Assembly (NCBI RefSeq): GCF_006345805.1
Contig: NC_042999.1
Span: 19,716,001 to 19,780,000, forward strand
Source: Octopus sinensis
Lineage: Eukaryota
Reading direction: 5' to 3'
DNA length: 64,000 nt
In this document: in pieces, positions 1 through 21,109 of the stretch
How positions within the stretch are numbered: position 1 is the stretch's first letter
Layout: each line of letters opens with the position of its first letter
The notes under the pieces: model-generated
Database searches by the model: none
Told to the model about the DNA's origin: nothing
The model's input: only the letters and a program-made list of their open reading frames with translations
Translations under genes and position numbers: made by a program

Positions 1-274
1 CCGATGTCTCCAAAAGAGTGAGTGACGTGGAGTTATGTGACAACCAACGATCACTATAGTTTCTTCCCAAAACCCGGATTTTTATAACTGCTCAACTTGA
101 CTGAAAAGAATCGAAATTCAGGACAAATATTCTTTACGAAACATTTAGAATCTTTATATGAGCAGTTATATTAACCAATAGGAAAAAAGAAAATGATAAT
201 TCTTCGGCAAAAACATTACGTCATATTGCCAATTCACGCCACATTTCAAAATGGCTAAAATGGTTATTGCTACA

Positions 275-960
275 CTCGCAAGGGAAACGTTGTTGTATTG
301 CATTTGTTAAATAATTGTAAACTGTAACCCTCCCCATCTGGGAGAAGGAACTTTGTTTATTGTTTAAAAATTGAATTGTGTCCCTGTTTGGTGAAATTGA
401 CAATATTTTCACCATTTATACGGAAGAATTTTTATTGGAATGCTTTCCATAGAAGAAAGTGTAAAAATGAATTTCGCTGCAGCCGTCGGCGGGCGCCACT
501 CAATAAAATTAAAATGGAAGAAATACAAACCTATTTCGGATTGATCACCGACAAAGACGGTGAATCTAGGATAACACCACCAAACGAAATACAAAATTAA
601 ATTAAAGAAAAGACTATTGTCTATAAAGTATACAATGTAGAGAAAACAAGATTTGAACACCTGCAGGAAAGCACCATCGAAAAGTGTCTTGGTGCGACTA
701 TGAAAGATTAAAGTATCTAACCAGAGGCAGTAAATTCCCCACAATAGAAGCAAGGTTCGAGTCAACGGAGCGTGCAAGGGAGTGCTCGACTCGAACCTTG
801 CAAAGTGGAAGTATTCTATTTTTACCTTTATATCTAGGACGTAGGACGTCCCGGACAAAAATTAAAATTTCCCCCCCAGAAGTCGAGATAGGCTGGATTG
901 TAGCCACACTTCTATACAAGAGGAAGGACAAGATACAATTGATCGAAATTGCAAGAGACG
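275..960 (+). pseudogene. Degenerate 5'UTR plus N-terminal ORF1 fragment of a Tx1-group retrotransposon paralogous to the element at 10020 (copy 1)
   Basis: Translates across frameshifts to NFAAAVGG...ESRITPP...IVYKVYNV...IEKC...TIEARFES...ILFLPLYLGRRT, colinear with ORF1 at 10288 (SFSDAVGG...ETRLVPP...VTYRVYNI...VEKC...TVEAHFET...IILLPLYLGCRT). Confidence 0.85.
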
Positions 961-1157: not shown

Positions 1158-1466
1158 GAGGGCGCAATGGCCCAGTGGTTAGGGCAGCAGACTCGCGGTT
1201 GTAGGATCACAGGTTCGATTCCAAGACCTGGCGCTGTGAATGTTAATTGAGTGAAAACTCCACGAGGCTCTACGACGCTCCGGCAGGGGTTTGTGGCGAT
1301 CCCTGCTGTAATCTTTCGCCAAAACTTTCTCTCTATATATCTCTGTTTTGTTGGCCTGCTCGATTAGCCTGCGAGGTGGCGTCATTTGAAGGCTAAAAGA
1401 ATGCAAAGTGCATTGTGACCAGCGATGAATAGCAAAATCAGATAGCCTGGTCTGTCACGGTGATCA
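1158..1466 (+). mobile_element. tRNA-derived SINE (octopus OR-like head) in U2 spacer
   Basis: Head gagggcgcaatggcccagtggttagggcagc with A/B-box-like motifs; orthologous insertions at 7302, 9287 and 17167. Confidence 0.85.
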
Positions 1467-1489
1467 CAGTGATATATGATTTGAAAATA

Positions 1490-1695
1490 AGATGCACTAA
1501 TCGAGGATTGAACGATCTGCTCAGAGGTCAGTCAGATTCATTCACCGTGACCTGCTACCCACCAGCCAGACACTAGCCAACACTGCTGATAAGTGATTAG
1601 CCGCGCCCCCTATCATGGTGACGTCACTTGTCTGAGACGTTTACTTTACGCAATGGTAAGAACATATATTACCATTCAACATACAATATCTATAT
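1490..1695 (+). promoter_or_regulatory. Orphan U2 upstream module (GC-rich box plus GTGACGTCAC) with no U2 downstream
   Basis: Near-identical to the sequence upstream of U2 at 8013 and 10009 up to base ~1695, then unrelated; TGACGTCA at 1619-1626. Confidence 0.75.
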
Positions 1696-2151
1696 TAAAT
1701 TAATATCCAATTTTTTCACCCGTATTTTGACTTTAATTATAAAATAACATGTTCTCAAACCGGCAGTAAATTACTTGTGCAGTATTTATATCCGAGAAAT
1801 TAGCGCGCCTTAACGAGGGCATTTGAATGTAACTGTGAATATAATCGGCCGATCTGTTAGCCTCAATCCAACCTCGTGTTGATAGCTTCCGTGCAGTTCG
1901 ACAAATTTTATTTTTGACGTACTCTACTGATGAATCGAAGATATTTAAGTAAGAAAAATAACAATTTATTAACGATGAAACAATTGCATAGAGTTAATCG
2001 ATATTTTCGTTATTTTTCATCTGTCCTGCTCGCTTACATTCTTGGTGTGTTAAATTATTCCTTGAGAACAATTCTTTGGTGGTAGATTCCCTTTGCGGAT
2101 CTATAACTAGCGTTAGAGCGTCCACATAGTGGATTCTCTCTCATAGTTTTC

Positions 2152-2200
<49 letters not shown>

Positions 2201-2215
2201 ACCATATATATATAT

Positions 2216-2470
2216 GGCATATGCAAAAAATTATTGTATACAGTGATCAAGTGCACTACAACTAAAAGAAAGCCATCAGGTGTACTGTTGGAGGATTTCA
2301 GGAAGGTTTGAAGAATTTGGTGTCTCTAAGGCTAACGACTGATGCTTCAACAATTCTGAGCGTGAAAAAATGTTTCCGAAAGTCATGGGTGATGCGTTGC
2401 TTTTTGATTTTGTCAGCATGTCCACGAGTGATGTTTTGTTTTATGATTTTGTGAGCCTGTCCACGAGTGT
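2216..2470 (-). mobile_element. 3' end of a CR1/L2-group LINE next to a (TA)n tract
   Basis: Minus strand reads KIKKQRITHDFRKHFFTLRIVEA...VVSLRDTKFF, the typical CR1-group C-terminal motif R..FF..RVV..WN.LP. Confidence 0.6.
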
Positions 2471-2922
2471 TTAACATATGGAGTTTAAAATGATGCCCAA
2501 ATTTGTTGGAATGTGGTGGGTGTTCTTGTTTTTATAACTATCCAGAAGGATAGACATTTCGTTGAGAACCATACAATTAGTTGGTGGTCTTCTTATTTTA
2601 ATACTAGCTGTTGGGAAATAGAAGATGTAAGAAAGGTCAAGTGGGGAAGACATTATTTCGGCTTCGCTAAAGCAATCTGGCAAATGTAAAACTTCTGTCA
2701 AAGAAAAACTCTTGTTTTACCATTGAACCCTATCAAAAGCCATACCCTTGAAATTTATGACCATAAGCCCTACTATTTACTTGTTTAGACAGAGTGAAGA
2801 AGGAAGCCCCTATTCAGTCTTTTCACTTACTAGAAATAGCAGCTAACTCCCCACTAACTCTACGAAACGAAACTCCAACGTCTTAAAATAAACGAATGAT
2901 AAGTGTACGTCAGACAATGTTC

Positions 2923-3043
<121 letters not shown>

Positions 3044-3417
3044 ATGGGATAGTCTTGCCTGGCACACCTCCTCAATGACAGCTGAAATGTTAATAACAAC
3101 CCCTCAATACAACACCGGAAGTGAATGAGACCGAAACTAATATCTCTTGGTTTGAAGTAAACTTCTCCCTTTACAACGAACCGACCAGTATGTGATCGTT
3201 CGATTTGCTAGAAGTAGCAACCAAACCGAAGCATTCGAAGTTGACGAAGAAAATGTCAGTTGCTTAAATATATATTTGCTTTTGATCCATATACATACTT
3301 TGAATATAATGCACCGGTCGAGGGTGCGATGCTCTGGTCACAGGTCAGTCAGATTCATGCTCCGTGACCTGCTACCCACCAGCCAGTCACTAGCCAACAC
3401 TGCTGATATGTGATTAG

Positions 3418-3690
3418 CCGCGCCCCCTATCTTGGTGACGTCACATGTCTTAGACGTTTATTTTATGTAATGATAAGAAGGTATGTTAACATTCAACATA
3501 CAATATCGATATATACTTACAAATAATTGATTTAAAGATATTAGAAATATTTTAAACTAGAAAATGTAAGGATTGAATGTGTTTACAATATAGCAGGTAA
3601 TTAAGTGTGATTGGAATAAACAATTTACACATCAGTGGGTGTAACATTAACTTGTGTAAAGATAGTCTGTGGGAAAACAGCTAAAATCTT
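3418..3690 (+). promoter_or_regulatory. U2 snRNA promoter: distal GC box and CRE-like palindrome at about -255, PSE candidate at about -50..-21
   Basis: Conserved upstream of all four U2 starts; TGACGTCA at 3436-3443; GTAACATTAACTTGTGTAAAGATAGTCTGTG at 3641-3671 resembles metazoan PSEs; exact element limits are inferred. Confidence 0.7.
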
Positions 3691-3880
3691 ATCGCTTCTC
3701 GGCCTTTTGGCTAAGATCAAAGTGTAGTATCTGTTCTTATCAGCTTAATATCTGATACGGTCCCTATTTGGGGCCATCGATATTAAACTGATTTTTAGAA
3801 CGAGGCGAAGTGTTAGGGGCTTGCTCCGCCTTTGCCACGGGTTGTCCTGGTATTGCAGTGCTTCCAGGATTCAGCCCGCT
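3691..3880 (+). ncRNA. RNU2: U2 spliceosomal snRNA (copy a, apparently intact)
   Basis: ATCGCTTCTCGGCCTTTTGGCTAAGATCAAAGTGTAGTATCTGTTC 5' end, branch-point recognition GTAGTA, stems IIa/IIb, Sm-like ATTTTTAG, stem III, stem-loop IV CCTGGTATTGCAGTGCTTCCAGG. Confidence 0.97.
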
Positions 3881-4400
3881 CACACCCGGGAGATACAAAT
3901 TAAAAATAAAATCAGATGTTTTGTTACAGTCCTCTTTTTGTTTCATCATCTCAGCGGGTTTTCTGTTAGTTGTCGTTGCTAAATACCTTCCTCACCATCA
4001 GCAAGCGCTTCACGTTCAATCCCGACTCAACCCCACGGTTTTTGTCCTCTTTGCTTCCTCATTTCAAATCCCGTCATCGCTTACACACCAACCCCTACCA
4101 GGCTCAGTGCCTTCAGAGGAGGCCCATTTTTTCTTTCAAGTCTCCCCTTTAAGTATATTTTCCTTCTCTCTCCTTCACACCAGTCTCAGGTGCCAAGCAT
4201 AGTCACACGGAAACTGCATTTCCACTTCACTACAACAAAGTATAACAACAGTAAAAACAATGTGGATGCACAAAAGAAGTGACATTCCCTATCCATCAAC
4301 CTACTAGAAATAGCAGCTAACAGACAGGATCAATTGGTAGGAAGTCCAGTATCTACCGCCAATAGTACTTACTAGTATAGTCTTTGAAAGAAAACAGCAG

Positions 4401-5130
4401 GGATCTTTTCCTTTTGAACGGCAGTTTTCAACACAATTTCCAGTTAACTAAAAACTTTTAAACTTCGTATACTGGTAGAATGTGTCAAAATAAAACATTT
4501 TTTTCTTTTGGCTTTCTTGAGAAGATTGTAATTTGTAAGTTTAACGTAGTTTAATTTTTCGAAGATGGCCTCTATTTAACTAAAATCATTTGCTGCGTCT
4601 AAAACTGAGACAACATCTTGTCATGTTATGTTTACGTTCGGAAAGCGTGTGTGTAAAATTTATAGAATTATTTTGTTTGTCAATTGTTTAAATTATTTTC
4701 CATTGCTTTCGTTTTAGCCTTTGGTTTTTTTTTTTCTTAAGCAATGGAAAATAGTTTAAACAATACACGTATATCTCAAAAGAAAATGAATAATTTTAGA
4801 CACACGCCTAACAATTAAATCAATTTAACAATTAAGAAGAAAAAAAACGAAAGGCTAAAATTTAGGGTTTGCGTTAGTGTAGGGTTAGGATTAGATCAGT
4901 GGCAGGATGTCTCAGTTTTAGACGCAGCAAAGGATTTTAGCTCAATAGAGGCCATCGATTGGTTAAAATACGAAAAATTAAACTACGTTAAACTTACAAA
5001 TTACAATTTTCTCAAGAGAGCGAAAAGAAAAAATGTTTTATTTTGACACATTCTACCAGTATACGAAGTTTAAAAGTGTTTAGTTAACTAGAAATTGTGT
5101 TAAAAACTGGCGTTCAAAAGGAAAATATCC
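4401..5130. mobile_element. Non-autonomous DNA transposon (MITE) with about 200-bp TIRs and 8-bp TSD, Merlin-like
   Basis: Starts GGATCTTTTCCTTTTGAACG, ends CGTTCAAAAGGAAAATATCC; AACAGCAG at 4393-4400 and 5131-5138; second truncated copy at 50975. Confidence 0.8.
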
Positions 5131-5740: not shown

Positions 5741-7281
5741 TCTATATATATAAAACTGAGAATGAGTGTCTGTCTATCTGTCTGACTGTATTTCCCTAAA
5801 ACCTGAGAACTACACAACCAATTTCATTCGAATTTTACACATAGCATACTTAGGGTCCGTGGAGTGTCATCGGCAAAAAAAGTTTTACCTTTTTGCCTAG
5901 GGAAAGCCAACAGCAATATCAAATCTTCTCCACTACGATTCCCTAAAACTTGAGAACAACACAACCAATTTCATTCAAATTTTACACATGCCTTACTTAG
6001 GGTCCATGTAGTTTAATGGGCAAAAAATGTTCAACTTCTTGCCTTGGGCGAGCCAATAGCAATATCATATCTTCTCCACTATTTCAGTATTATGTGTTAA
6101 AGGTGAAACAAAAATATTTCGCTATTTTATGTCAGAAACTTTCACTATAAATTTAGAGATAATAATAATAATTGAATTATATGTAGTAAATAATAATCAA
6201 AATCAAACTAAAGTACAATATAATCGTAACCTAAGATAAGTGAAAGTAGCAATTGGTATAAAATTGCATCAACGACTTGAACTTGAATAAGTGGTTTCAC
6301 ATGAATGGGAATAAATTAAACTAAATCAATCGCGTACTGCTTTTTGATTCACCGTAATGTGTGTTGTTATTATTATTACTGTTTAACTATTGTTATCACG
6401 TTTGTCGGTTCCTCGTAAAGAAAACGTTGTTGTGTTGCATTTGTTAAATAATTGTAAACTCTAACCGTCCCCCTCTGGGAGAAGGAGCTTTGGTTATTGT
6501 TTGAAAATTGAATTGTGTACCTTTTTGGGGAAATTGACAATATTTTCACCGTTTATACGGAAGCATTTTTGTTAGAATGCCTTCGATAGAAGAAAGTCCA
6601 AAAAGGAATTTCGCTGCAGCCGTCGACGGGCGCGAACTCATTAAAATTTAAATAAATACAAACCTATTTCGGATTGATCACCGATTAAACGGTGAATCTA
6701 GGATAACACCACCAAACGAAATAAAAAATTTAATTATAGAAAAATCTATGGTCAATAAAGTATACAATGTAGAACTAAACAGATTTGAACACCTGGAGGA
6801 AAGCACCATCGAAAAGTGTCTTAGTGCGACTATGAAAGTTATCAAGTATCTAACCAGAGGCGGTAAGTTCGCCACAATAGAAGCAAGGTTCGAGTCAACG
6901 GAACGTGCAAGGGAGTACTTGACTCGAACCTTGCAAAGAGGAAGTATTTTATTTTTACCTTTATATCTCGGACGTAGGACGTCCCGAACAAAAATTATAA
7001 ATATCCCCCCAGAAGTAGAGGTAGTCTAGATTGTAGCCACACTTCTATACAAGAGGTGGGAAAGTAACAATTGATCGAAATTGCAAGAGACGTAACTACA
7101 ATTCGAGTCTGTTATATATTTTGAGTATTTTTATCACTAGCGATATCAATATATAACTTTCTATGTTGTACTATATGTGTAGATGTATATATATGGATGT
7201 ACAAGTAATATGTACGCATATATATACACATATATACATGCACTATCACTATGATTCGGCAGCGATGGGTCATAATAATAG
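5741..7281 (+). mobile_element. Non-autonomous Helitron carrying a Tx1-type ORF1 fragment
   Basis: 5' TCTATATATATAAAA like the other Helitrons in the window, internal ~150-bp tandem duplication (about 5790-6080), cargo 6411-7090, 3' hairpin plus ATAG|t; the empty site is visible at 17139-17160. Confidence 0.7.
6411..7090 (+). pseudogene. Tx1-group 5'UTR/ORF1 fragment (copy 2)
   Basis: ORF 6748-7029 VYNVELNRFEHLEESTIEKC...TIEARFESTERARE...LPLYLGRRT, homologous to ORF1 at 10288. Confidence 0.85.
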
Positions 7282-8012: not shown

Positions 8013-8191
8013 ATCGCTTCTCGGCCTTTTGGCTAAGATCAAAGTGTAGTATCTGTTCTTATCTGATACGGTCCCTATTTGTGGCCATCGATATTAAACT
8101 GATTTTTAGAACGAGGCAAAGTGTTAGGGGCTTGCTCCGCCTTTGCCACGGGTTGTCCTGGTATTGCAGTGCTTCCAGGATTCAGCCCACA
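8013..8191 (+). pseudogene. RNU2: U2 snRNA copy b with an 11-nt deletion in stem-loop IIa
   Basis: TTCTTATC|TGATACG versus TTCTTATCAGCTTAATATCTGATACG in the other copies; rest of gene and promoter intact. Confidence 0.92.
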
Positions 8192-8809
8192 CCCAACTGG
8201 GAGATACAAATTAAAAATGAAATCAGATATATTGTTACAACCACCATTTTTTTTCGTCATTTCAGCGGGTTTTCCGTTAGTTGTCGTTGCTAAAGAACTT
8301 CCTCGCTGTCAGCAAGCGGTTCCCTTTCGATCCCGACTAAACCCCACGGTTTTTGTTCTCTCTGCTTCCTCATTTCAAATCCCGTCATCGCTTTCTCACC
8401 AACCCCTTCCAGGTTCAGTGCCTTTTGAGGAGATCCTTTTCCTTCTAAGCAGTCGATTCAAGTCTCCACTACTTTAAGTATACTTTTCTTTCTATATCCT
8501 TCACATCAGGGCGGACTTCTATTCTCTTTCCTGTTTCAGTCATCCGACTGCGGCCTTGTTGGTGCACAGCCACGAACATTTAGACGTATAAATCGACACC
8601 AGCACTTATTATTTGATGCCTAGTACGTAAGCTATCGTGTATAGCTGAAGATACATACCCAAGGAGCCACCCAAAGAACTGATCTCGGACCCATGTTTTT
8701 GAGAAGCAAGCTCCTTACGAAACGGCAATTTCTACCTATTTTTTTTTAAATTGCAAAGCAGCTGTTCCTCAAAATAGATCTTATGTAACACATCTGCTTC
8801 TAAAGTTGG

Positions 8810-9266
8810 TGCGACAATGAAATATATCAAGTATCTAACCAGAGGCGGTAATGCACCACAATAGAAGCAAGGTTCTTGTCAACGGAGCATGCAAGGGAGT
8901 ACTCGACTCGAACCTTCCAAAGTGGAAATATTTTATTTTTACCTTTATATCTGGGACGTAGGACGTCCCAGACAAAAATTTAAAATGTCCCCCCAGAAGT
9001 AGAGGTAGTCTGGATTGTAGCCACACTTCTATACAAGAGGGAGGACAAGATACAATTGATCGAAATTGCAAGAGATGGGCCTACATTTCAAGATTGTTAT
9101 ATATTTTGAGTATTGTTATCACTAGCGATATCAAGATATAACTTTGTATTTTGTATTTTATGTGTAGGTGTATATATATAGATGTACATGTAATATATAC
9201 ACATATATATACACATATATACATGAACTAGCACTATGACCCGGCAACGACGAGTTATAATGCTAG
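8810..9266 (+). mobile_element. 3' half of the ORF1-carrying Helitron (copy 3), fused to the U2b 3' flank
   Basis: Begins mid-ORF1 fragment (ggtgcgacaatgaaa), ends acccggcaacgacgagttataatgCTAG|t. Confidence 0.7.
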
Positions 9267-9286
9267 TTGGTCTATATATGTGATTT

Positions 9287-9603
9287 GAGGGCGCAATGGC
9301 CCAGTGGTTAGGGCAGCGGACTCGCGGTTGCAGGATCGTAGGTTCGATTCCAAAACCTAGCGTTCTGAGTGTTTATTGAGCGAAAACACCAAAAGCTCCT
9401 CGACGGTCCGGCAGGGGGTGGTGGCAATCCCTGCTGTACCCTTACAACACAACTTTCTCTCTCTCTCTCTCTCTCTCTCTCTTTTGTTGGCCTGCTCGCT
9501 TAGCCTGCGGGGTGGTGTCATTTGAAGGCCAAAAGAATGCAAAGCGCATTGTGACCGGCGATGAATAGCAACATCTGATAGCCTAGTCGGTCACGGTGAT
9601 CAC
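9287..9603 (+). mobile_element. tRNA-derived SINE in U2 spacer
   Basis: Same family and position as 1158 and 7302. Confidence 0.85.
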
Positions 9604-9736
9604 AGTGATATATGATATGAAAATAAGATGCACTAATCGAGGGTGGGACGCTCTGGTCAGAAGTCAGTCAGATTCATTAACCGTGACCTGCTACCCACCA
9701 GCCAGTCACTAGCCAACACTGCTGATAAGTGATTAG

Positions 9737-10008
9737 CCGCGCCCCCTATCATGGTGACGTCACTTGTCTGAGTCGTTTACTTTACGCAATGGTAAGAACA
9801 TATATTACCATTCAACATACAATATCTATATAAACTTACAAATAATTAATTTAAAGATATTAGAAATATTTTAAACTATAAAATTTTAGAATTGAATGTG
9901 TTTACAATATAGCAGGTAATTAAATGTGATTGGAATAAATAATTTACATATCAGTGGATGTAACTTTAACTTGTGTAAAGATAGTCTGTGTCAAAGCAGC
10001 TAAAATTT
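9737..10008 (+). promoter_or_regulatory. U2 promoter now directly upstream of the retrotransposon
   Basis: TGACGTCA at 9755-9762 (-254), PSE candidate gtaactttaacttgtgtaaagatagtctgtg; nearly identical to the U2b promoter. Confidence 0.8.
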
Positions 10009-10019
10009 ATCGCTTCTCG
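10009..10019 (+). other. U2 nucleotides 1-11 (ATCGCTTCTCG), left copy of the target-site duplication
   Basis: Follows the U2 promoter at the normal start position, then switches abruptly to element sequence TCCATCGCTACC. Confidence 0.9.
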
Positions 10020-10287
10020 TCCATCGCTACCTGGTGTTTTTTTAATTTTTCCTCGGTTTATACCAATATTTTTCTGTTGCTGCAAATCGTTGTGTGAGTT
10101 CGTTTCCGTTTGTCTACTCTGTCGTGTTACAAGTAATATCATTGTTGAACTGTTTTTGACCCAGTAATTTTCGCCCTTCGGGGTAGAAAATTTCTGTGGT
10201 TTTTTTTTTTTTGTGTGTGTGAATTCTTAACCTGTATAGGTTATTTTTGGAAAAAAAAAAAATTCTCTTGTCATTTGTGACAAGTTT

Positions 10288-11629
10288 GTGTTGTCTAATA
10301 TGGAATTAGACTTAAGTTCAAAAAAAGACTTTCCCGAAATGGGAGAAAGTATAACAACTGTTAAACAAAAGGAAACACAGACAAAACCCAGTTTTTCAGA
10401 CGCCGTAGGTGGCGAAGTCGAAGAAATGGAGGTATCAATGGAAAGATTATTCAAGTTTAGATCGCTGGTGCAAAAAAGTGGCGAAGAAACACGATTGGTA
10501 CCGCCCCCCGAAACTATACAAGCAATAAAGGAAAAAATGGTCACCTACAGGGTGTACAATATCAAGGAAAAACGAATGACCGACGTGAAAAACGAAATGG
10601 TCGAAAAGTGTATGGCTCCAATATGGAGTAAAGTTAGTCATGTCAACCGAGGTGCAAGAAGCGCTACAGTGGAGGCGCATTTTGAAACGGCGGAAGTAGC
10701 AAGGCAAATTTCGACACAAACGTTGAAAAACGAGAGTATAATACTGCTACCCTTATATTTAGGATGCAGAACCGCAAAAGTGACCCTAGAAGATATACCA
10801 ACGGGCTACGACGTGATGTGGGCGGCAACAGCGGTCATTTTTGATGTTGAATCAAAATTGACAATTTTAAGTATGAAGAGAAAAATTGCAAAACACTGGA
10901 GAGGCCAGCAGCTGGAGATGATAATCCAGGCGGAAAATGCGACGTTGGAAAGCCTACCAGACAGAGTCTTCGTGGGGGAGGGGCACTCCATACGAGTTTC
11001 GGTGGAAGGACGCAGGCCCAGATGTTTTAAGTGCGGGCAAAGGGCCACGTTCGCTCCGTTTGCACAAAAAAAATAATGCGGGCAACGCCCCCCCACAAAA
11101 CGCTGTGAAGAACGCAGAAAGCAGCAAAGTGGAGAAAAAAGTAACGGCTGGCGAAAACAAGGAGGAAAAATAAACAGGTCGAACTCCAAAAAGGAGGAAG
11201 ACAAGAACGAAATGCAAAATGAGAAAGGAAAGGATGAGGAAAATAATGCAACAAAAACAAATAAACAAGAAGACATGGAATTTACGAACGTGTCCAACAA
11301 AAGGAAAAAATCCATCACCCCTGACTCCCCACCCGTATCAAAAAAAAAAAAACAACGCAGACGAACAAATTAAAAATATTCTCCAATCCCACCCCGGCGG
11401 TACTACACTTATAGGCCAGCACTTTAACAAACCCCACCCCCCAACTGTAAAAGGGTTTAAACCCAACGAAAAAATTATTGCATACACCACAAAGAACGTG
11501 AGAGTAGAAACATGGGTGAAAGCAAGTACGCTGATCAGGTGCTACAAAGCGACCGAGAAGGAAGCGGAGTGGGGGGGAGACAGGCAGAAAGAATCTGTCA
11601 GGCTCCCTCTCGCAACCGTGAGTAAATAA
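10288..11629 (+). pseudogene. ORF1 (gag-like, CCHC zinc knuckle), frameshifted
   Basis: Restoring one G near 11043 gives CFKCGQRGHVRSVC (CX2CX4HX4C), followed by a Lys/Glu-rich region; further shifts at A-runs; stop at 11627-11629. Confidence 0.85.
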
Positions 11630-11644
11630 TTTTCTTTTTTCTCG

Positions 11645-14600
11645 ATGATTAAGTTAGGTTGTATAAATGTGCGTGAATGGGATCGAAATGGAAACAGGCT
11701 TGTTTTCGTGACGACCTCATTTCACATAGAATCGAAGTAGCTATTGTTACCGAGTCCAAGATGAAGGGACCCCAAGCGTTTTCACCACTTCTCAATGGTT
11801 ACGAGAAATTTATTTCTCCTAGCCGAGGGGGAGGTGCAGGCGTGGCAGTTCTTTTCAGGAAGAACTTGGACTTACAGGTAAGTACTGTCTTTTTGGACCC
11901 AGAAGGTAGGCTGGTTGTCCTAGATGTGACGCACGTGAGTAAGCAGTCCTTCAGGTTGGTGGCTGTCTACGCTCCTAACGGACGTGGGCAGACCGGTTTT
12001 TATCGGGAACTGGAGCACTTTCTAGTGACGTCCAAAACGGTAGTCTTGGTAGGGGATTTCAACACCATTCTCGATGCGCGGGTGGATGGTGTAGGCTCGA
12101 GCGATAGGAAGGGGAATCCTGGCCTCAAGGCTCTACTAGCGAGCTTTAATCTAGTAGACCGTTTTCGACTGGATGAGCCGAACGTTCCACAGTGGACGTG
12201 GAGTAATAACGACGGCTCACTCAGATCGTACATAGATAGAGTATTTGTTAAGGAACGAGATAGGAATAGTGTTAGCTGTCAACAATTCTCTGTTGTGCCT
12301 TACACGGATCACAAACTTGTAACGTGTGAGGTACATGTAGATAAATGCCATAGACAAGGTGCCGGGTACTGGAAGATGAACAAGTCTATTTTGACCTGTG
12401 AAGCTTTCCGTACCCAGATTAAGGAATTAGTACAGAGGGCATTATGTGGCACCATCATTAATAATAGATGGTGGCTCGCCCTCAAAAGAGCCATCCGTTT
12501 GGAGTCCATTAGATTTAGCAAGCAGCTAAGTTTAGATAGGACTAGAATAGAGGGCGAATTAGTTAAGAACTTAGACGAGGATATGGAATCTGGCTGTGCA
12601 TCCGGAGTGTTGGCAGCGAGAGCGGTATTGTACCGTCACCTCAACGCCAAGCACGAGGGGTGTAGAGTCAGAGCTAAGTTACGTGCAGGAAAACGAGAAG
12701 GTATTAACGTTGCCGGATGGGCCCGTCGTGAGGAGAGTCAGAAGGGCAAAAAGTCCTGTATTATGTCCTTATCTGACGAGCAGGACCGCAAGATCTATGG
12801 ACAGGAGGAGATGCAGAAGGTACTTCACCAGCATTTCACACGGCTGTTTGGGGGCGGTGGCCCGCTCGAGCGTGGGGAGACCTTAAAGGACTTCCTAGCT
12901 GGTGGGCCTCGGCTCTCGGCGGGTGAGGCGGAGTGCTGTGAAGGATCGATCTCTCCCGCAGAGGTAAGAGGGGTTATGGCCGAGTGCGCCGGGGAAAAGT
13001 CACCGGGATTGGATGGTCTACCCTATTAATTTTATTGTTGTATGCCGGACTTGTTCGGGGGCATACTGGCAAGCGTCTATGCAAACTGGCAACAGAATGG
13101 GAGGATTCCCAGCTCTGTGAGTCGGGGAGTTGTGACGCTGGTCCAGAAAGACCCGAGCAAGGGGGACAGTATTAGTAATTACAGGCCCATAACTCTACTT
13201 AATGTAGAGTTTAAGATTTTGGCCAAGGTGTTAGCAAAAAGGTTGACGGCTGTCGTGAAGAAACTTGTCGGGAAGGCACAGACATGTGCAATCCCAGGCA
13301 GGTCGATCCAGGATAATCTTCACCTTCTCCGCTACACTATAGATAGGGTCGGGAAATTAGACGGCAAAGGAGGGGCATTGGTCCATTTAGACCAAAGTAA
13401 AGCGTTTGATAGGGTGGACCATCGGTACTTGGCGGCGGTTCTCGAAGCGGCTGGGCTGGGCCCTGGCTTCTGCGGGTGGATCTCAGCTATGTACAGCGGC
13501 ATCAAGTCCACAGTCCAGATAAACGGTTACCTAACGGAGCCGTTTTCGATCAAGCGTTCAGTTCGTCAAGGGTGCCCCTTGTCCCCGCTCCTGTATGTTT
13601 TGGCTCTTGAGCCATTGCTGCGGAAGCTGGAGAAGTTGGGAGGCAACCCTAATGAAATCGGATGCGGTAAGTCTGTTTCTGCCTATGCGGATGACGTCAC
13701 CCTCATCGTGTCCAACGGAACACAGCTACCTCGGGTAGTAGGTGCTCTCCATAGATACGAAGCGGTAGCAGGGGCAAAAGTTAACAGGGACAAGTCCATC
13801 GGTTTGCGCCTCGGCACCTGGAGGAACAAGCAGATACCGTCCAGTGTTGTTGGACACTGGACGGATGGTCCTGTTAAATTGCTCGGAGTCTGGTTTGGTC
13901 CAGACTCCCAGACGGAGAAGAATTGGAGCGAGGTAACGAGCAAGGTGGATGCCATAGTACGGAAGTGGTCCGGAAGGCATCTTTCCTTGAAAGGGAGGGC
14001 GGAGGTGGCACAGATGTTTATAGCCTCTGTCGTCACCTACCGCCTGACCGTCGTGCCTTGCCCCGATTCGTGGTTAAACAAGTTGGAACGACTTCTTTTC
14101 CGCTTTTTGTGGAAAGGAGGAAAGCCACTTGTGAGACGCTCCGTGTGTTGCCAGGAACCGCTAAAGGGTGGACTGGGGATGCCTTGGCTAATGATGCGCA
14201 AGCATGCGTTGAGGCTGAGACACCTCTGGTGTTACCTGGAGGATGATAAGGTGTGGAGTTCGCTGGCAGAGGAATTCTTCCCGCGACCGGCCTCTATGGA
14301 GGGATTTACACCCGGTCTCATTAAAGGACGTAAACTGACTTCATGGCAGAAGGAGTGCCGACAGGCACTCTGGCTGATCCACAAGATGGGTAAGGCCGGC
14401 AGCGGGAATACCACCTCGGTGTTCTATAAAGGGCTGGTAGGAGGAAAAAATGACGACGTCCTAGGAAGGGCTCTGGGGTTCGATGAGGATCAACTCTCCA
14501 ACCTGTTTAAGAAGACTTTCAGGCCGGGGTATTTGGATAATTACCAAAAATCCCTGACCTGGCAGTGCTATAGGAATGCATTACCTGTTCGCGAGAAGTT

Positions 14601-15033
14601 ATCCAGGCACGGAATGTCAGTGCCACCGACGTGTCCAAGATGTGGGTTGGACGATGAAACCGTTCAACACGCTTTTGTACAATGTCGGGAGCTGTCAGGC
14701 TTGATAAGTTACGTTGAACACGTGTTGTCGCATCTGGGACGAGTACAGCTGTCGGCTGCATCTATGATTAAGATGATACCGCCAACTGGACTCTCAAAGG
14801 AAGGTAAGGCTTGTTTTTACTGTACGGTGGCAGTATTGAAAGAGTGTGTATGGAGAACTAGAGTGGAAGGTCTAGTGAAAGGGTCCTTTAACTCTGGCCC
14901 CGGTTTGTTAAAATACTTCGGATATCATCTGAAGAGCAAGATGGGGTTGGAGAAGAGGAGCCTGCCACAGAAAGAGTATATGGAACGTTGGAAGGATGTG
15001 ATGAGAAAGGTGGGTGAGAGTAACCCAGCTTAA
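11645..15033 (+). pseudogene. ORF2: APE endonuclease, reverse transcriptase and C-terminal zinc finger; one frameshift and one nonsense codon
   Basis: MIKLGCINVR(G)MGSKW start with one base missing near 11675; TESK, VYAP, GDFN, SYIDR, YTDH APE motifs; PGLDGLPY-TAA(13027)-FY; YRPITLLN, DQSKAFDRV, QGCPLSPLLY, YADD; CPRC...ETVQHAFVQC. Confidence 0.95.
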
Positions 15034-15388
15034 TCATCGAGGAAAGGAAAAATCAGCTGCTGGGATTTATAGGCTGCCGGGTTCAAAATTGAAACTGGTA
15101 CCTCCCATTACCTTTCACTGTACATAACTGTTTAAAATAAAGAATTAATAATAAAAAAAAAGAAATCAAAAGAAAACATACGCACTAAAAGTTCTCGTGA
15201 CAAAGGCAAAAGTAAGCCAAGGTTTCGTTTCAAGGCAAAGTAAGCCAAGTTTTCGTTCAAGTGACATAAAATTTTAATTTTGTAATTTTTAAAATTTCAT
15301 TCGAACTCGCATAGCATTTTTGTAATTGTTTTGTCCTGTAATGTATCCATTCTATGTTAGATCTATTGATCATAATAAAGAAAATTTT

Positions 15389-15578
15389 ATCGCTTCTCGG
15401 CCTTTTGGCTAAGATCAAAGTGTAGTATCTGTTCTTATCAGCTTAATATCTGATACGGTCCCTATTTGGGGCCATCGATATTAAACTGATTTTTAGAACG
15501 AGGCAAAGTGTTAGGGGCTTGCTCCATCTTTGCCACGGGTTGTCCTGGTATCGCAGTGCTTCCAGGATTCAACCCACT
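15389..15578 (+). pseudogene. RNU2: U2 snRNA copy c: complete sequence but cut off from its promoter
   Basis: Full U2 directly after the element's 3' end; carries private substitutions including loop IV ATTGCAG>ATCGCAG; normal 3' flank follows. Confidence 0.92.
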
Positions 15579-17166
15579 CCCACCCGGGAGATACAAATTA
15601 AAAATAAAAACAGATATGTTGTTACAGCCCCCTTTTTTTCTTTCATCATCTCAGCGGGTTTTCCGTTAGTTGTCGTTGCTAAAGACCTTCCTCGCCGTCA
15701 GCAAGCGGTTCGCGTTCGATCCCGACTCAACCCCATAGGTTTTGTCTTCTTTGCTGCCTCGATTCAAATCCCGTCATCGCTATTACACCACCCCTACCAG
15801 GTTCAGCGGATTTTGAGAGGAACCTTTTCTTTCTAAGCAGTCGATTCAAATCTCCACTACTTTAAGTATACTTTTCTTTCTATATCCTTCAAACCAGGGC
15901 GGAATCTATTCTCTCTCATGTTTCAGTCATTCAACTGCGGCCATGTTGGGGCACAGCCACGAACATTTAGACGAATGAATCGACACCAGCACTTATTTTT
16001 TTAAGCCTAGTACGTAAACTATCGTGTATAGCTGATGATACTAGCCCAAGTTGCTACGCAAAGAACTGATCTCGGACCCATGTTTTTGAGAAGCAAGATC
16101 CTTACTAAACGGTCATTTCTACCCATTTTTTTAAATTTTAAAGCTGCTCCTCAAAATAGATCTTATGTAACACATCTGCTTCTAAAGTTTTATACCTAAG
16201 AATTCTAGGAAGTTTAACGTGAATCCTTTTGTGCCGTACACCAATAACCACTCCGTTATGTCCCCCCTCCCTCCCTCACCTTTTCCTTAATACCCTAAGC
16301 TCGGGCTTATTTTGTTTAATGTGTAGCGTACCCTTAGTGAAATCCTTTCTCTCTCTCTCTCTCTCTGACATATATAACATAAATACGGCCGATAACAGCT
16401 AACCTTCGGCCGCTTGGGCCTGTTGTGTCAACTACACCGATTGGTTGGGATTGGCGCAGTTTGTCTCTTGCTCAATTACGCCCGAATACGCAACCCAACC
16501 AATCACAATCTTCAGATAAGATCCCGTGACACAGTCGTCTAAATTCTTTGCTTGAGCCTACAATTTGCTATAATACACAGTGATTCATCGAATCGAGCTT
16601 CTTTGGTTCTAGTCCTTCTAAGGACTAACCCCTGACCTCAGAGCACCCACTGACAGACAGCCAGTTCCAGCGATTCAGCCAGTTCCAGCGACAGACAACA
16701 CCACTAGCAGAATTTCCGGACCTTCAACTATGTCGCCTTCATCTTAACGACGCCAACAGCAACTTCGCCTTGATTTAACTTCCCACTGTTTGTCAATACT
16801 TCACCATGGTTAACAGTAAGCGCAACCGGCGAGTACCTTCTGTACCAAGTGACCCGGCACGGCATAGCATCCACAACCGCTTACACGACATGTGTTCAAC
16901 AGGCTCTGTCTTGTGCCCTCAGCTCCTTAGTTACAGGATTTCTACAGTTGTGTACTTCACTAGGAACTGGTATTTATCTTCAACTTGAGTCTGAACATTC
17001 AACCACCGTCCTATTGTAAAGACTTTCTACGCTCTGTATTTTATTACACACGCATACACCCTTGTTTGTACGACTTAAAAGGTATCGCAATCAAAACAAA
17101 ACATTCGACATTAACGAAGATGTGAGTCGCTTAAATATTTGTTATTGGTCTATATATATGTGATTT

Positions 17167-17864: not shown

Positions 17865-18054
17865 ATCGCTTCTCGGCCTTTTGGCTAAGATCAAAGTGTA
17901 GTATCTGTTCTTATCAGCTTAATATCTGATACGGTCCCTATTTGGGGCCATCGATATTAAACTGATTTTTAGAAGGAGGTGAAGTGTTAGGGGCTTGCTC
18001 CGCCTTTGCCATGGGTTGTCCTGGTATTGCAGTGCTTCCAGGATTCAGCCCATC
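17865..18054 (+). ncRNA. RNU2: U2 spliceosomal snRNA (copy d, apparently intact)
   Basis: Complete U2 sequence with upstream module (TGACGTCA at 17609-17616) and conserved 3' flank. Confidence 0.96.
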
Positions 18055-18663
18055 TCCCACCTGGGAGATACAAATAACAAATAATGTCAGATATATTCTT
18101 ACAGGCCCCTTCTTTCTTTCATCATCTCAGCGGGTTTTCCGTTAGTTATCGTTGCGGAAGGCCATCCTCGCCGTCAGCAAGCGGTTCCCGTTCGATCCCG
18201 ACTGAACCTTCGTCCACTTCCAATTTCGTACGCATTGCTTTCTCATTTGAAATCCTGTCATCGCTTTCACACCACCCCCTATCTGGTTCAGTGCCTTTAG
18301 AGGAAACCCTTTTTTTCTTGCAAGAGGTCGGTTCAAGTCCCCACTTTAAGTATACTTTTCTCTTTATATCCTTCACACCAGTCTCAGGTGCCCAGCAAAG
18401 TTACGGTGAAACTGCATTTCCACTCCACTACAACAAAGGCCAGACTGATACCTATACAGCCCCTAATCTCTTCAAAAAGATTTTGGTGCCGCCAGATATA
18501 TATAATTCAAAATGTAAACAATAATAAGCGATAAGTAAAATTTTCATTTTGCAAAATCAAATAAAACAAACAGTAAGATGGAAAATAATCCCTTCCACTA
18601 AAGGAAAAAGGCCTTGAAATGTTGGGGGAGGGGGCCAGTCGATCAGATCGACGCCAGTATGCA

Positions 18664-18910
18664 ACTGGTACTAAGTTTGTCGGCGAGCTGGCAGAATTGT
18701 TAGCGCGCGGGATGAAATGCTTAGCATTATTTCGTCTGCCGTTACGTTCTGAGTTCAAATTCCTCCGAGGTCGACTTTGCCTTTCATCCTTTCGGGATCG
18801 ATAAATTAAGTACCAGTTACTCACTGGGGTCGATGTAATCGACTTAATACCTATGTCTGTCCTTGTTTGTTCCCTCTGTGTTTAGCCCCTTGTGGGTAAT
18901 AAAGAAATAG
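18664..18910 (+). mobile_element. Octopus SINE family with head ggcgagctggcagaa
   Basis: gttcaaattcc B-box-like motif and gactttgcctttcatcctttcggggtcgat core; further copies near 27580, 29630, 39040 and 61715-62128 (minus). Confidence 0.8.
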
Positions 18911-19167
18911 TTTATCGACCCCAGAAAAAAGTTTATCGGCCCCAGAACGATGGAAAGAAAAATCGATTCCTGCGGAATTTGAACTCAGAACATGAAGTAT
19001 TGGTACTTTTCTTGAACTTGTGCCTGAACACTCATTTAGCGTCCTATTGCAAACACTTTCTATGCTCTGTATTTTATCACACACGCATACACCCTTGTTT
19101 GTACACACATATTCATTATTGTATGCATGACGGCCTGTCTATTATTGTTCTTATGTACTTATGTCGC

Positions 19168-21109
19168 ACAGGGTCATAGCCCAACTGATTAGGGAGAGAG
19201 TCAACTTGGACGAGATGCAGTTTGGCTTCGTGCCAGGGAAAAGCACCATCGATGCCATATTTCTGGTGAGACAGCTGCAGGACAAATACCTAGCCAAAGT
19301 TACACCTCTGTACCTGGCTTTCGTTGTCATGGAGAAAGCCTTTGACAGGGTCCCCCGATCCCTTATCTGGTGGTCAATGAGGAAACTAGGGATAGATGAA
19401 TGGTTAGTGAGAGCTGTGCGAACCATATACAGGGACGCTGTTAGTAATGTGAGGGTTGGCAACGTGTACAGTGAAGAATCCCGGGTAAAGGTTGGGGTCC
19501 ACCAAGGTTCAGTCCTCAGTCCCTTCCTATTTATCATAATCCTCCAGGCAATAACAGAGGAATTCAAGACAGGATGCCCCTGGGTGCTCCTCTATGCTGA
19601 TGACCTTGCTCTAATTGCTGAGTCACTATCAGAACTGGAGGAGAAGTTTCAGGTGTGGAAGCAAGGATTAGAATCGAAGGGCCTAGCTAAAACCAAAGTC
19701 GTAATAAGTAGGAAGGTAGACAAGTCACAAACGCCTTCAGGTAGATGGCCTTGCTCGATCTGTAGGAAAGATGCACCAAGTGTAAGCTATGGACACATAA
19801 GAGGTGCAGCAACGTCAAGGGAAGGCTAACTAGGAAGATAGTTTTTGTATGTGGTAAATGCTCAGGAGCAATAAACACTGAAAATGCGCAGAGAGCAACT
19901 TCCGCCACATTCCAAGGAGAAAAACTAGAAATAGTTGATAGCTTCCTTTACCTAGGTGACCAAGTCAGTAGCAGGGGCGGGTGTGTTGAAAGTGTAACTG
20001 CTAGAGTAAGAATAGCTTGGGCAAAGTTCAGAGAGCTCTTACCTCTGCTAGAGTAAGAATAGCTTGGGCAAAGTTCAGAGAGATCCTACCTCTGCTAGGG
20101 ACAAAAGACCTCTCGCTCAGAGTAAAAGGCAGACTGTATGATGCATGTGTACGAACAGCCATGCTACATGGCAGTGAAACATGGGCCGTGATTGCTGAGG
20201 ATATGCGTAAGCTCACAAGAAATGAAGCCAGTATGCTCCGATGGATGTGTAATGTCAGTGTTCATACTCGACAGAGTGTAAGTACCTTGAAAGAGAAGTT
20301 GGACCTAAGAAGCATCATTTGCGGTGTGCAAGAGACGTTTGCGCTTGTATGGCCATGTGGCAAGAATAGATGAAGATAGTTGTGTGAAAAAGTGCCACAC
20401 CTTAGCTGTTGAGGGAACCTGTGGAAGAGGCAGACCCAGAAAAACCTGGGATGAGGTGGTGAAGCACAACCTTCGAACTTTAGGTCTCACCGAGGAAATG
20501 ACTAGAGACCGAAACCTTTGGAAGTATGCTGTACGTGAGAAGACCCGGCAGGACAAGTGAGACCATAACCCATGGCTTCAGTCCACTTATACATACCTTT
20601 CCTTCTTCGGACACAAAACTCTACTTGTGAAGACCTGTTGAGGCAAGTGAAAATCAAAAATCAAAATCAAAATCGAAATCGATCAACATCAATGGAATTT
20701 GTAGTTGTGATACCATTGCCGGTGGCACGTAAGAGAACAATCCGATCGTGGCCGTAGCCAGCGCCGACCTGACTGACCCCCGTGCCGGTGGCACGTAAAA
20801 AAACACCATCCGATCGTGGCCGTTGCCAGCCTCGCCTGGCCTCCGTGCCGGTGGCATGTAAAAAGTACCATCCGAACGTGGCCGTTTGCCAGCCTCGTCT
20901 TGCACCTGTGTCGGTGGCACGCAAAAAGCACCCACTACACTCACGGAGTGGTTGGCGTTAGGAAAGGCATCCAGCAGTAGAAACACTGCCAGATCAGACT
21001 GGGCCTGGTGCAGCCTTCTCGCTTCTCAGACCCCAGTTGAACTATCCAACCTATGCCAGCATGGAAAGCGGACGTTAAACGATGATGTTGATGATGATGA
21101 TGATGATGA
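19168..21109 (+). mobile_element. 5'-truncated, degenerate RTE-clade LINE with minisatellite-like 3'UTR and (GAT)n tail
   Basis: QFGFVPGKSTIDAIF, EKAFDRVPR, GVHQGSVLSP, LLYADDL; C-terminal RGRPRKTW; 3' end ggacgttaaacgatgatg; 3' fragments also near 22110, 27120 and 30930 (minus). Confidence 0.92.

What the first reader, a model, noticed from the sequence alone, without database searches (positions are those of the whole stretch)
9737..10290. Promoter capture: the element may be transcribed from the U2 snRNA promoter as a U2(1-11)-element chimera
Seen: the whole upstream module (CRE-like box at -254, PSE candidate, start site) is intact and contiguous with the element's 5'UTR, and only 11 U2 nucleotides intervene. 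Inference: Pol II started at the U2 promoter would give a capped RNA beginning AUCGCUUCUCG, so the element would need no promoter of its own. As with R2/28S co-transcripts, those 11 nt could guide 5' integration and re-create the same junction each cycle. The RNA would have to bypass snRNA-type (Integrator/3' box) termination, ending either at AATAAA 15374 or running through the downstream U2.
Basis: inference. Interest (0 to 1): 0.85.

Follow-up and report, generated by a model that had tools for sequence, protein, structure and literature searches.

The report
LINE retrotransposon inserted at U2 start
A 5.4-kb, now-defective LINE retrotransposon sits exactly at the transcription start of one U2 snRNA gene in a tandem array, so the U2 promoter is fused to it, but nothing here shows that the element relies on that promoter.

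Summary
An intact U2 upstream module (97% identical to the neighbouring unit) runs into U2 nt 1-11 (10009-10019) and then into the 5'UTR of a sense-oriented LINE (10020-15385). A complete U2 follows (15389-15582).

The "11 U2 nt" are therefore ordinary duplicated target DNA from staggered nicks, not evidence of an RNA leader.

The element is L1/Tx1-like: CCHC ORF1, then APE-RT-zf-RVT ORF2. It has an ATG-free leader and its own AATAAA, and it lacks an A-tail. This copy is dead (ORF1 frameshift, lost ORF2 start, two or more in-frame stops).

Its closest full-length relative (Argonauta, 51% ORF2 identity) has a 17-bp duplication at an AT-rich non-U2 site, and none of the other relatives' loci fetched contains a U2 gene. 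No 5' ribozyme was found. T7 and T13 tracts lie 28 and 191 nt after the U2 start.

One hint favours site preference. An older related LINE remnant inside the U2 repeat unit is preceded by a diverged U2 -20..+11-like sequence.

Verdict: the fusion is real, promoter dependence is unproven and is the less likely reading, and interest is modest.

The parts
9465..10008 (+). U2 upstream (promoter) module of the interrupted unit
   Evidence: About 86% identical to the 17865 unit over 9465-10022. The last 400 nt are 97.2% identical to the 8013 unit.
9755..9762 (+). CRE-like TGACGTCA at -254
   Evidence: Lies within the block TGGTGACGTCAC, which is invariant in all four U2 upstream regions.
9966..9989 (+). 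Invariant proximal block TTAACTTGTGTAAAGATAGTCTGT (-43..-20), a possible core promoter element
   Evidence: Invariant among the four units. Its function was not tested.
10006..10019 (+). 5' copy of the target-site duplication TTTATCGCTTCTCG (U2 -3..+11), containing the 'U2 nt 1-11' at 10009-10019
   Evidence: Exact 14-bp repeat with 15386-15399.
10020..15385 (+). Full-length but defective L1/Tx1-like non-LTR retrotransposon
   Evidence: Single copy in the window. Domains. ORF2 aligns to 1,148-1,155-aa relatives in one reading frame. The closest solved structure is human L1 ORF2p (E 7e-42).
10020..10299 (+). 5' leader: ATG-free, T-rich, with T7 (10037-10043) and T13 (10200-10212)
   Evidence: Folding z-score is -2.3. 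No Rfam family matches at E<=1.
10300..11076 (+). ORF1, with its CCHC zinc knuckle split by a frameshift near 11040
   Evidence: CFKCGQ lies in one frame and KGHVRSVC in the next; the Argonauta ORF1 has the intact KCFICQKPGHLKSVC.
11665..15033 (+). ORF2 (APE about 11719-12312, RT about 13165-13890, zf-RVT about 14548-14688). The start codon is lost, and there are in-frame stops at 11674-11676 and 13027-13029.
   Evidence: PF03372 3.4e-12, PF00078 2.6e-32, PF13966 4.1e-10. Stops and N-terminal decay.
15034..15385 (+). 3'UTR ending ...CATAATAAAGAAAAT, with AATAAA at 15374 and no poly(A) tail
   Evidence: The last 150 nt are alignable with the 3' end of the Argonauta relative (z=3.4, 3/1000 shuffles), which ends ...CTAATAAAGAAATC.
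15386..15399 (+). 3' copy of the target-site duplication
15389..15582 (+). Complete U2 coding sequence now separated from its promoter
   Evidence: Rfam RF00004, 183.6 bits, model positions 1-192. Upstream of -3 lies the element's 3'UTR.
15602..15639 (+). 3'-box-like motif AAATAAAAACAGAT (15602-15615) and a T7 run (15633-15639) downstream of the U2
   Evidence: The motif occurs exactly only about 20 nt after each of the four U2 genes. T5-T8 runs lie about 51 nt after three of the four U2 3' ends; the fourth has TTCTTTCTTTC there.
245..956 (+). Older related LINE remnant, unit 1: U2 -20..+11-like sequence at 245-278, leader at 279-439, ORF1 fragment at 440-956
   Evidence: tblastn 32-33% identity, combined E 8e-22. 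The end-anchored U2-junction score is reached by 6 of 127,467 window positions.
6401..7050 (+). The same older remnant, unit 2: TTTGTCGGTTCCTCG at 6401-6415, leader, and ORF1 fragment
   Evidence: tblastn 35% identity, E 5e-22. The anchored score is reached by 47 of 127,467 positions.
8858..9073 (+). The same older remnant, truncated, in the unit that hosts the new insertion
   Evidence: tblastn 35% identity, E 5e-12.

Best explanation
This is an ordinary target-primed reverse-transcription (TPRT) insertion of an L1/Tx1-type LINE, in sense orientation, into the start region of one U2 gene of a tandem U2 array.

Staggered nicks produced the 14-bp duplication TTTATCGCTTCTCG: the bottom strand was cut between -4 and -3, and the top strand between +11 and +12. 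The upstream copy of the duplication leaves the U2 promoter plus U2 nt 1-11 abutting the element's leader. The downstream copy restores a complete but promoter-less U2. These steps are shown by the sequence.

The promoter fusion is a by-product of where the element landed. The U2 promoter probably still initiates at 10009 and reads into the leader. However, the element family carries its own ATG-free leader and its own AATAAA, and a relative lives outside U2 genes, so the family does not depend on the U2 promoter. These steps are inferred.

This copy is coding-dead and cannot be an autonomous source. Whether the lineage prefers this U2 site is unresolved, at roughly even odds.
For: - Perfect 14-bp target-site duplication bracketing the element.
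- The empty site is reconstructed by the neighbouring unit: 6821-8026 matches 8806-10022, and 8006-8807 matches 15382-16189.
- APE, RT and zf-RVT domains, and closest solved structure L1 ORF2p.
- The Argonauta hians relative (51% ORF2 identity over 1,117 aa) is full length. It has a 17-bp duplication in AT-rich non-U2 DNA, the same AATAAAGAAA 3' terminus without an A-tail, and an ATG-free 234-nt leader.
- No U2 gene in relatives' loci L001-L006 and L008.
- No ribozyme in the leader.
- T7 at +28 and T13 at +191; T-tract termination of promoter-proximal and snRNA Pol II is described in PMC11610936.
- Defects of this copy.
- Only one of five U2 start sites in the window is occupied by this element, and there are no further copies or fragments of it.
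Against: - A second, older related LINE remnant in the same array is preceded by U2 -20..+11-like sequence. This suggests recurrent use of the same site rather than chance.
- The precise 3' end has no A-tail and no microhomology to the primer (my reading of the junction sequences). That would fit priming on a transcript that reads through into U2.
- Element nt 4-21 match U2 nt 1-18 at 13/18 positions.
- No U2-type 3' box occurs inside the element, so read-through to the downstream U2 is not excluded.
- No transcript data were available.
Confidence: 0.7

Rival explanations
1. The lineage is specific for the U2 start site and uses the external snRNA-type Pol II promoter instead of a promoter of its own. 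Its RNA begins AUCGCUUCUCG, and this leader (and/or read-through into the downstream U2) anneals to the target and re-creates the same junctions each cycle.
For: - The promoter and start site are intact and the element is in sense orientation.
- The leader is ATG-free from +1.
- The older related remnant has a U2-like 5' flank: anchored score reached by 6/127,467 positions in unit 1 and 47/127,467 in unit 2; collinear weak similarity of window 1-278 to the promoter, z=2.0.
- There is no A-tail.
- The first U2-type 3' box lies only after the downstream U2.
- The general idea is already stated in the literature for target-specific elements (PMC4494074, citing R2).
Against: - The 11 nt are fully explained by a 14-bp target-site duplication of a length comparable to the 17 and 22 bp made by relatives at non-U2 sites.
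- The nearest full-length relative and four more distant relatives' loci are not in or near U2 genes.
- The U2-like motif at element nt 4-21 is not significant by local-alignment shuffles (p=0.12-0.56).
- The U2-like flanks of the old remnant are much more diverged than the remnant itself, and BLAST sees nothing there.
- T7 and T13 tracts lie close to the start.
- In vertebrates, snRNA promoters are coupled to 3'-box processing rather than to polyadenylation (PMC5493778).
- The copy is dead.
Confidence: 0.2
2. This is a sub-case of the best explanation. The lineage does target the U2 start region, using a multicopy RNA gene as a safe haven as Keno and Utopia do, but it is transcribed from its own internal promoter. 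The promoter fusion is then irrelevant to its life cycle.
For: - Two related LINE generations sit in one U2 array, both in sense orientation, and both apparently joined at U2 +11.
- Many Tx1-clade families are target-specific, and Keno targets U2 (PMC4494074, PMC4640811).
- The 3' junction is precise and has no A-tail.
Against: - The evidence for the old junction is post hoc and weak (BLAST negative; global z=2.0).
- The Argonauta relative is at a non-U2 site.
- Four of the five U2 start sites carry no copy of this element.
Confidence: 0.25
3. The structure did not arise by retrotransposition. It would instead be an assembly error, or a recombination joining a U2 promoter to a LINE located elsewhere.
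For: The array is heavily rearranged: an orphan promoter fragment at 1300-1702, and units of unequal length.
Against: A perfect 14-bp duplication lies exactly at both ends, and the two flanks together reconstitute one U2 unit collinear with its neighbour.
Confidence: 0.03

Closest known systems
Keno (Tx1-clade, APE-type non-LTR retrotransposons specific for U2 snRNA genes; Kojima & Fujiwara 2004, as described in PMC4640811 and PMC4494074)
   Same: An APE-type LINE located in a U2 snRNA gene of a multicopy array. Its architecture (ORF1 plus APE-RT ORF2 with a C-terminal zinc-binding region) is compatible with the L1/Tx1 group.
   Different: In Keno (and Utopia) the 3' flank starts at U2 nt 39. 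Here the 3' flank starts at -3 and the 5' flank ends at +11, so the whole U2 coding sequence is regenerated downstream. Clade membership by RT phylogeny was not tested. Family-level target specificity is not shown here. Keno has been reported from vertebrates, lancelet and cnidarians, not from molluscs.
Utopia (RLE-type U2-targeting non-LTR retrotransposons; PMC4640811)
   Same: The target gene is U2. Target-site duplications of about 20 bp are reported for the reptile Utopia families.
   Different: Utopia encodes a PD-(D/E)xK restriction-like endonuclease, whereas this element has an APE domain. The insertion site also differs (nt 38/39 for Utopia).
R2 in 28S rDNA (co-transcription with the target and 5' processing by an HDV-like ribozyme; cited in PMC4494074)
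   Different: R2 is transcribed by Pol I, encodes an RLE, and carries a self-cleaving ribozyme. Here no Rfam ribozyme is found at E<=1, the promoter is an external snRNA-type Pol II promoter, and the element has its own AATAAA.
Upstream-promoter capture and 5' transduction by LINE-mobilised elements (e.g. the SVA subfamily transcribed from the MAST2 promoter, and SINEU 5' extensions; PMC4494074)
   Same: An upstream host promoter can drive a retroelement copy and add host nucleotides to its 5' end.
   Different: In those cases the host-derived 5' sequence is carried to new loci, which proves the transcript existed. Here the 11 nt are indistinguishable from target-site duplication, and no second copy is available.
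The unnamed full-length LINE in Argonauta hians (locus L002; ORF2 51% identical, RT part P0002 57%)
   Same: Same ORF1 type (CCHC) and the same APE-RT-zf-RVT ORF2. Both have an ATG-free leader of 234-280 nt, a 3' terminus AATAAAGAAA without an A-tail, and a 14-17-bp target-site duplication.
   Different: The Argonauta element sits in AT-rich, microsatellite-flanked DNA with no U2 gene within 10 kb.

Membership tests
APE-type non-LTR retrotransposon of the L1/Tx1 group | ORF2 with an N-terminal apurinic/apyrimidinic-like endonuclease followed by a reverse transcriptase | tested here: met
   PF03372 E=3.4e-12 and PF00078 E=2.6e-32. ORF2 aligns in a single reading frame with 1,148-1,155-aa relatives. 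The best solved-structure match is L1 ORF2p at E 7e-42, against R2 at 2e-25.
APE-type non-LTR retrotransposon of the L1/Tx1 group | C-terminal zinc-binding region, and an ORF1 with a CCHC knuckle | tested here: met
   zf-RVT PF13966 E=4.1e-10. The CCHC knuckle is present but split by a frameshift.
APE-type non-LTR retrotransposon of the L1/Tx1 group | Target-site duplication flanking the insertion (the TPRT signature) | tested here: met
   14/14-bp duplication at 10006-10019 and 15386-15399.
APE-type non-LTR retrotransposon of the L1/Tx1 group | 3' poly(A) tail (typical of L1 proper) | tested here: not met
   The element ends ...AATAAAGAAAAT directly at the duplication. The Argonauta relative also lacks a tail.
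Tx1 clade | Placement within the Tx1 clade in an RT phylogeny with reference elements | not tested
Keno (U2-specific Tx1 family) | Insertion at the conserved site with the 3' flank starting at U2 nt 39 | tested here: not met
   The 3' flank starts at U2 -3 and the 5' flank ends at +11. The Keno site is taken from PMC4640811.
Keno (U2-specific Tx1 family) | Most or all family copies reside in U2 genes | not testable with these tools
   There is one copy in the window. The source genome is absent from the protein collection (best hit 62%). The metagenome scans were empty.
Utopia | Restriction-like (PD-(D/E)xK) endonuclease C-terminal to the RT | tested here: not met
   An APE domain lies at the N-terminus, and Pfam reports no RLE-type family in ORF2.
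R2-type co-transcribed element | Self-cleaving (HDV-like) ribozyme at the 5' junction | tested here: not met
   An Rfam E-value search of 9600-15700 returned only the U2 gene.
R2-type co-transcribed element | Transcripts initiated at the host gene's promoter | not testable with these tools
   No transcriptome data. Only the permissive geometry is shown.

The most novel reading that the evidence does not exclude
A cephalopod-type LINE lineage is specific for the U2 snRNA transcription start (nicks at -4/-3 and +11/+12). It has re-used this site over a long period: an old remnant and a young copy sit in the same array. It depends on the external PSE-type Pol II snRNA promoter for its transcription, producing capped U2(1-11)-led RNAs that escape snRNA-type termination. 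This would be a U2-targeting strategy distinct from Keno and Utopia (nt 38/39), and the first LINE shown to live off an snRNA promoter.
Probability: 0.2. Interest if true: 0.75.

Novelty: new member of a known kind. Interest (0 to 1): 0.35.

Why it matters
If the fusion is incidental, this is one more LINE insertion that knocks out one copy of a multicopy U2 gene. It is useful for annotation: a promoter-less U2 at 15389 and a dead LINE.

If the lineage really targets the U2 start site and is driven by the U2 promoter, two things follow. It would add a third, mechanistically different U2-targeting retrotransposon lineage. It would also give a natural test case for how far an snRNA-type Pol II promoter can support a long, translatable, possibly polyadenylated transcript. 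That question is otherwise addressed only with artificial reporters.

Tried and rejected
- Ribozyme or other known RNA in the leader: an Rfam E-value search of 9600-15700 found nothing but the U2.
- Other copies of the element in the window: none by blastn. tblastn found only the old ORF1 remnants and an unrelated RT fragment.
- Same-genome or close copies in public data: the best protein hit is 62% identical. A JGI metagenome scan with the RT found no relative. A junction pattern AATAAAGAAA-N(0-8)-ATCGCTTCTCGGCC found nothing.
- U2 genes near relatives: the loci searched were L001-L006 and L008. Rfam found none, and the 11-mer was absent from L001-L004.
- A U2-derived 'head' at element nt 4-21: 13/18 matches when anchored at U2 nt 1 (3 chance sites in 128k positions), but local-alignment shuffles gave p=0.12-0.56. 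The shared CATCGCT 7-mer with the Argonauta leader is at chance level. I treat this as not significant.
- 5'UTR homology between this element and the Argonauta relative: not significant (p=0.2-0.45).
- Unit 2 upstream region as the 3' end of a tandem LINE copy: z about 0. Rejected.
- An 18/19-bp target-site duplication (AAAAT(T)TTATCGCTTCTCG): this needs an indel. The exact 14-bp reading is preferred because the Argonauta relative ends with the same AATAAAGAAA motif.
- The vertebrate 3'-box consensus: the full GTTT...AAARNNAGA motif was not found anywhere in the first 20 kb, which holds the whole U2 array. The half motif is too loose to be useful. An array-derived motif was used instead.
- A tandem LINE array in relative L006: the junction contains no RNA gene. 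Not pursued.
Full report
**Context.** The first 19 kb of the window hold a rearranged tandem array of U2 snRNA units, all on the + strand. Rfam finds four complete U2 genes at 3691-3884, 8013-8195 (with an 11-nt internal deletion), 15389-15582 and 17865-18058. Self-comparison shows repeat units of about 2 kb interrupted by other sequence. The rest of the window is repeat-rich eukaryotic DNA with microsatellites and SINE-like repeats. The best named protein relative of the element comes from the octopod Argonauta hians, so a cephalopod host is likely. This is an inference.

**The observation.** It is correct.
- 10009-10019 is ATCGCTTCTCG, identical to U2 nt 1-11.
- The 400 nt upstream are 97.2% identical to the upstream region of the neighbouring unit.
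- That stretch contains every block that is invariant among the four units, including TGGTGACGTCAC with TGACGTCA at -254 and a -43..-20 block.
- From 10020 the sequence is unrelated to U2.
- AATAAA lies at 15374, and a full U2 follows at 15389.

The element is bracketed by a perfect 14-bp direct repeat, TTTATCGCTTCTCG, at 10006-10019 and 15386-15399. The two flanks together reconstitute one U2 unit collinear with its neighbour: 6821-8026 matches 8806-10022, and 8006-8807 matches 15382-16189. This is the signature of target-primed reverse transcription (TPRT) with staggered nicks, the bottom strand cut between -4 and -3 and the top strand between +11 and +12. The 11 U2 nucleotides are therefore the part of the duplicated target that lies downstream of the start site. 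They do not by themselves indicate an RNA-borne leader. An alternative cannot be excluded from one copy: an RNA that already carried U2 1-11, inserted with almost blunt nicks near -3/+1. It is less parsimonious, because relatives make long duplications at non-U2 sites (below).

**The element (10020-15385).**
- It has a 280-nt leader.
- ORF1 runs from 10300 and contains a CCHC knuckle.
- ORF2 carries APE (PF03372), RT (PF00078) and zf-RVT (PF13966) domains in one frame from 11665 to 15033.
- The 352-nt 3'UTR ends ...AATAAAGAAAAT with no A-tail.
- The closest solved structure is human L1 ORF2p (E 7e-42, against 2e-25 for R2). It is therefore an L1/Tx1-group LINE. Tx1-clade placement was not tested.
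- The copy is defective. The ORF1 knuckle is frameshifted (CFKCGQ|KGHVRSVC, against the intact KCFICQKPGHLKSVC in Argonauta). The ORF2 start is lost, and the conserved INVRGL motif reads YKCA*MG, with the catalytic Asn replaced and a TGA at 11674. A TAA at 13027 interrupts the APE-RT linker.
- The rest of ORF2 has no frameshift, so the copy is young but dead.

**Relatives.**
- The protein collection has nothing closer than 62% identity, so the source genome is not represented.
- The Argonauta locus L002 holds a full-length relative: ORF2 51% identical over 1,117 aa, and ORF1 29%.
- That relative has a 17-bp duplication, TATTTTTAAAATTTGTA, in AT-rich, microsatellite-flanked DNA. It has the same AATAAAGAAA 3' terminus without an A-tail (the 3' ends are alignable, z=3.4) and an ATG-free 234-nt leader.
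- A more distant relative, L003, has a 22-bp duplication at an unrelated GC-balanced site.
- No U2 gene occurs in any of the relatives' loci fetched and searched.
- So a full-length element of this group can sit where there is no U2 promoter, and a 14-22-bp duplication is normal for the group.

**Features bearing on transcription from the U2 promoter.**
In favour:
- Sense orientation.
- An external promoter and start site untouched by the insertion.
- No ATG from +1 to the ORF1 start (0 observed, 5.0 expected, P=0.004). The relatives' leaders are also ATG-free, so this is a LINE property rather than a U2-specific one.
- The array's own 3'-box-like motif, AAATRAWRWCAGAT, occurs exactly only about 20 nt after each U2 gene. 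It does not occur exactly inside the element, where the best match has 2 mismatches.

Against:
- There is no 5' ribozyme.
- T7 at +28 and T13 at +191 lie on the coding strand.
- Three of the four native U2 units carry a T5-T8 run about 51 nt after the U2 3' end.
- In mammals, Pol II at snRNA genes and in promoter-proximal regions terminates at such tracts (PMC11610936).
- In vertebrates, snRNA promoters are coupled to 3'-box processing rather than to mRNA-type 3' end formation (PMC5493778).
- The vertebrate data are extrapolated to this host.

The idea that a target-specific element needs no promoter if its target is transcribed is already in the literature (PMC4494074).

**An unexpected hint of recurrence.** tblastn with the element's ORF1 finds older, diverged ORF1 fragments (32-35% identity; E from 5e-22 to 5e-12) on the + strand inside three U2 repeat units, at 505-956, 6694-7050 and 8858-9073. 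Their ORF1 ATG is at 440 and 6577, and their leaders are ATG-free.

Homology between units 1 and 2 starts abruptly at CTCG (275-278 and 6412-6415). The 15-35 nt just upstream resemble the U2 start region:
- Unit 1 reads TCAAAATGGCTAAAATGGTTATTGCTACACTCG, against U2 TCAAAGCAGCTAAAATTTATCGCTTCTCG.
- Unit 2 reads TTTGTCGGTTCCTCG.

An end-anchored alignment score of 17 (unit 1) is reached by only 6 of 127,467 window positions, and a score of 14 (unit 2) by 47. Window 1-278 is weakly collinear with the promoter (174/314 matches, z=2.0, 42/1000 shuffles), with TGACGT at -243 against -254.

Caveats:
- The test is post hoc.
- BLAST sees no similarity.
- The U2-like flanks are far more diverged than the remnant copies are from each other.
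- The upstream sequences of the two units are not homologous to each other.

I rate at roughly even odds that an older related LINE also sits at U2 +11. If it does, the lineage prefers this site.

**Comparison with known systems.** Keno (APE-type, Tx1 clade) and Utopia (RLE-type) are the known U2-targeting LINEs. Both leave a 3' flank starting at U2 nt 39 (PMC4640811). Here the flank starts at -3, so the defining site of Keno and Utopia is not met, and Utopia's endonuclease type is not met either. R2 is the model for co-transcription, but its ribozyme is absent here. The element is best filed as a new family of the L1/Tx1 group. Whether it is a new U2-targeting variant depends on a genome-wide census that could not be run.

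**Verdict.** The fusion of an intact U2 promoter to a LINE leader is real and well defined. The most likely reading (about 0.7) is that it is a by-product of a TPRT insertion and that the family does not depend on the U2 promoter. Interest is modest.

Noticed in passing
window 245-956, 6401-7050, 8858-9073: Diverged ORF1 fragments of an older related LINE are embedded, in sense orientation, about 1 kb upstream of the U2 start in three repeat units. In two of the units the fragment is preceded by a U2 -20..+11-like sequence.
   Followed up: partly
window 8013-8195: This U2 copy lacks 11 nt, most of a 12-nt stretch in the second 5' stem-loop of the Rfam model (score 153.8 against about 182 bits for the others). 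It is probably a variant or a pseudogene.
   Followed up: no
window 1300-1702, then 1703-3290: An orphan U2 upstream fragment, including the CRE box at 1619, breaks off at about -171. It is followed by about 1.6 kb of unrelated sequence with (TA)n and (AT)n runs before the next unit resumes at 3291. The segment 1472-1695 is duplicated at 3291-3512.
   Followed up: partly
window 19161-19829 (+): A 222-aa RT fragment (PF00078 E=1.3e-21) of an unrelated LINE, 25% identical to the element's RT. It lies about 1.1 kb downstream of the last U2 gene.
   Followed up: partly
window 48622-49293 (-): An ORF with a weak GIY-YIG match that falls below the Pfam threshold (E=0.008). It may be a remnant of a Penelope-like element.
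   Followed up: no
window 4401-4612 / 4908-5130: An inverted repeat of about 220 bp (89% identity) sits within the spacer after the first U2 unit. A related copy occurs at 50975-51289. It looks like a foldback or MITE-type insertion.
   Followed up: no
window 21115-21322 and at least 12 other sites; 1161-1333 and 8 other sites; 18681-18910 and 5 other sites: Several families of SINE-like repeats of 170-230 bp are scattered through the window. One of them lies inside each long U2 unit upstream of the promoter.
   Followed up: no
window 3904-3939, 8215-8254, 15602-15639, 18079-18092: Each U2 gene is followed about 20 nt downstream by AAATRAWRWCAGAT (3'-box-like). In three of the four, a T5-T8 run follows about 51 nt downstream. 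This arrangement resembles the mammalian pairing of a 3' box with a T-tract terminator.
   Followed up: partly
L006 1-15346 (ENA contig ctg14421c): A distant relative (42% identity) occurs as head-to-tail tandem copies, with about 830 nt between one ORF2 stop and the next ORF1 start. No RNA gene lies in between.
   Followed up: partly
window 10164-10190, 10228-10245, 10266-10287: Three short perfect hairpins occur in the element's leader, including a GCCC-UUCG-GGGU tetraloop stem. Whole-leader folding gives z=-2.3.
   Followed up: no
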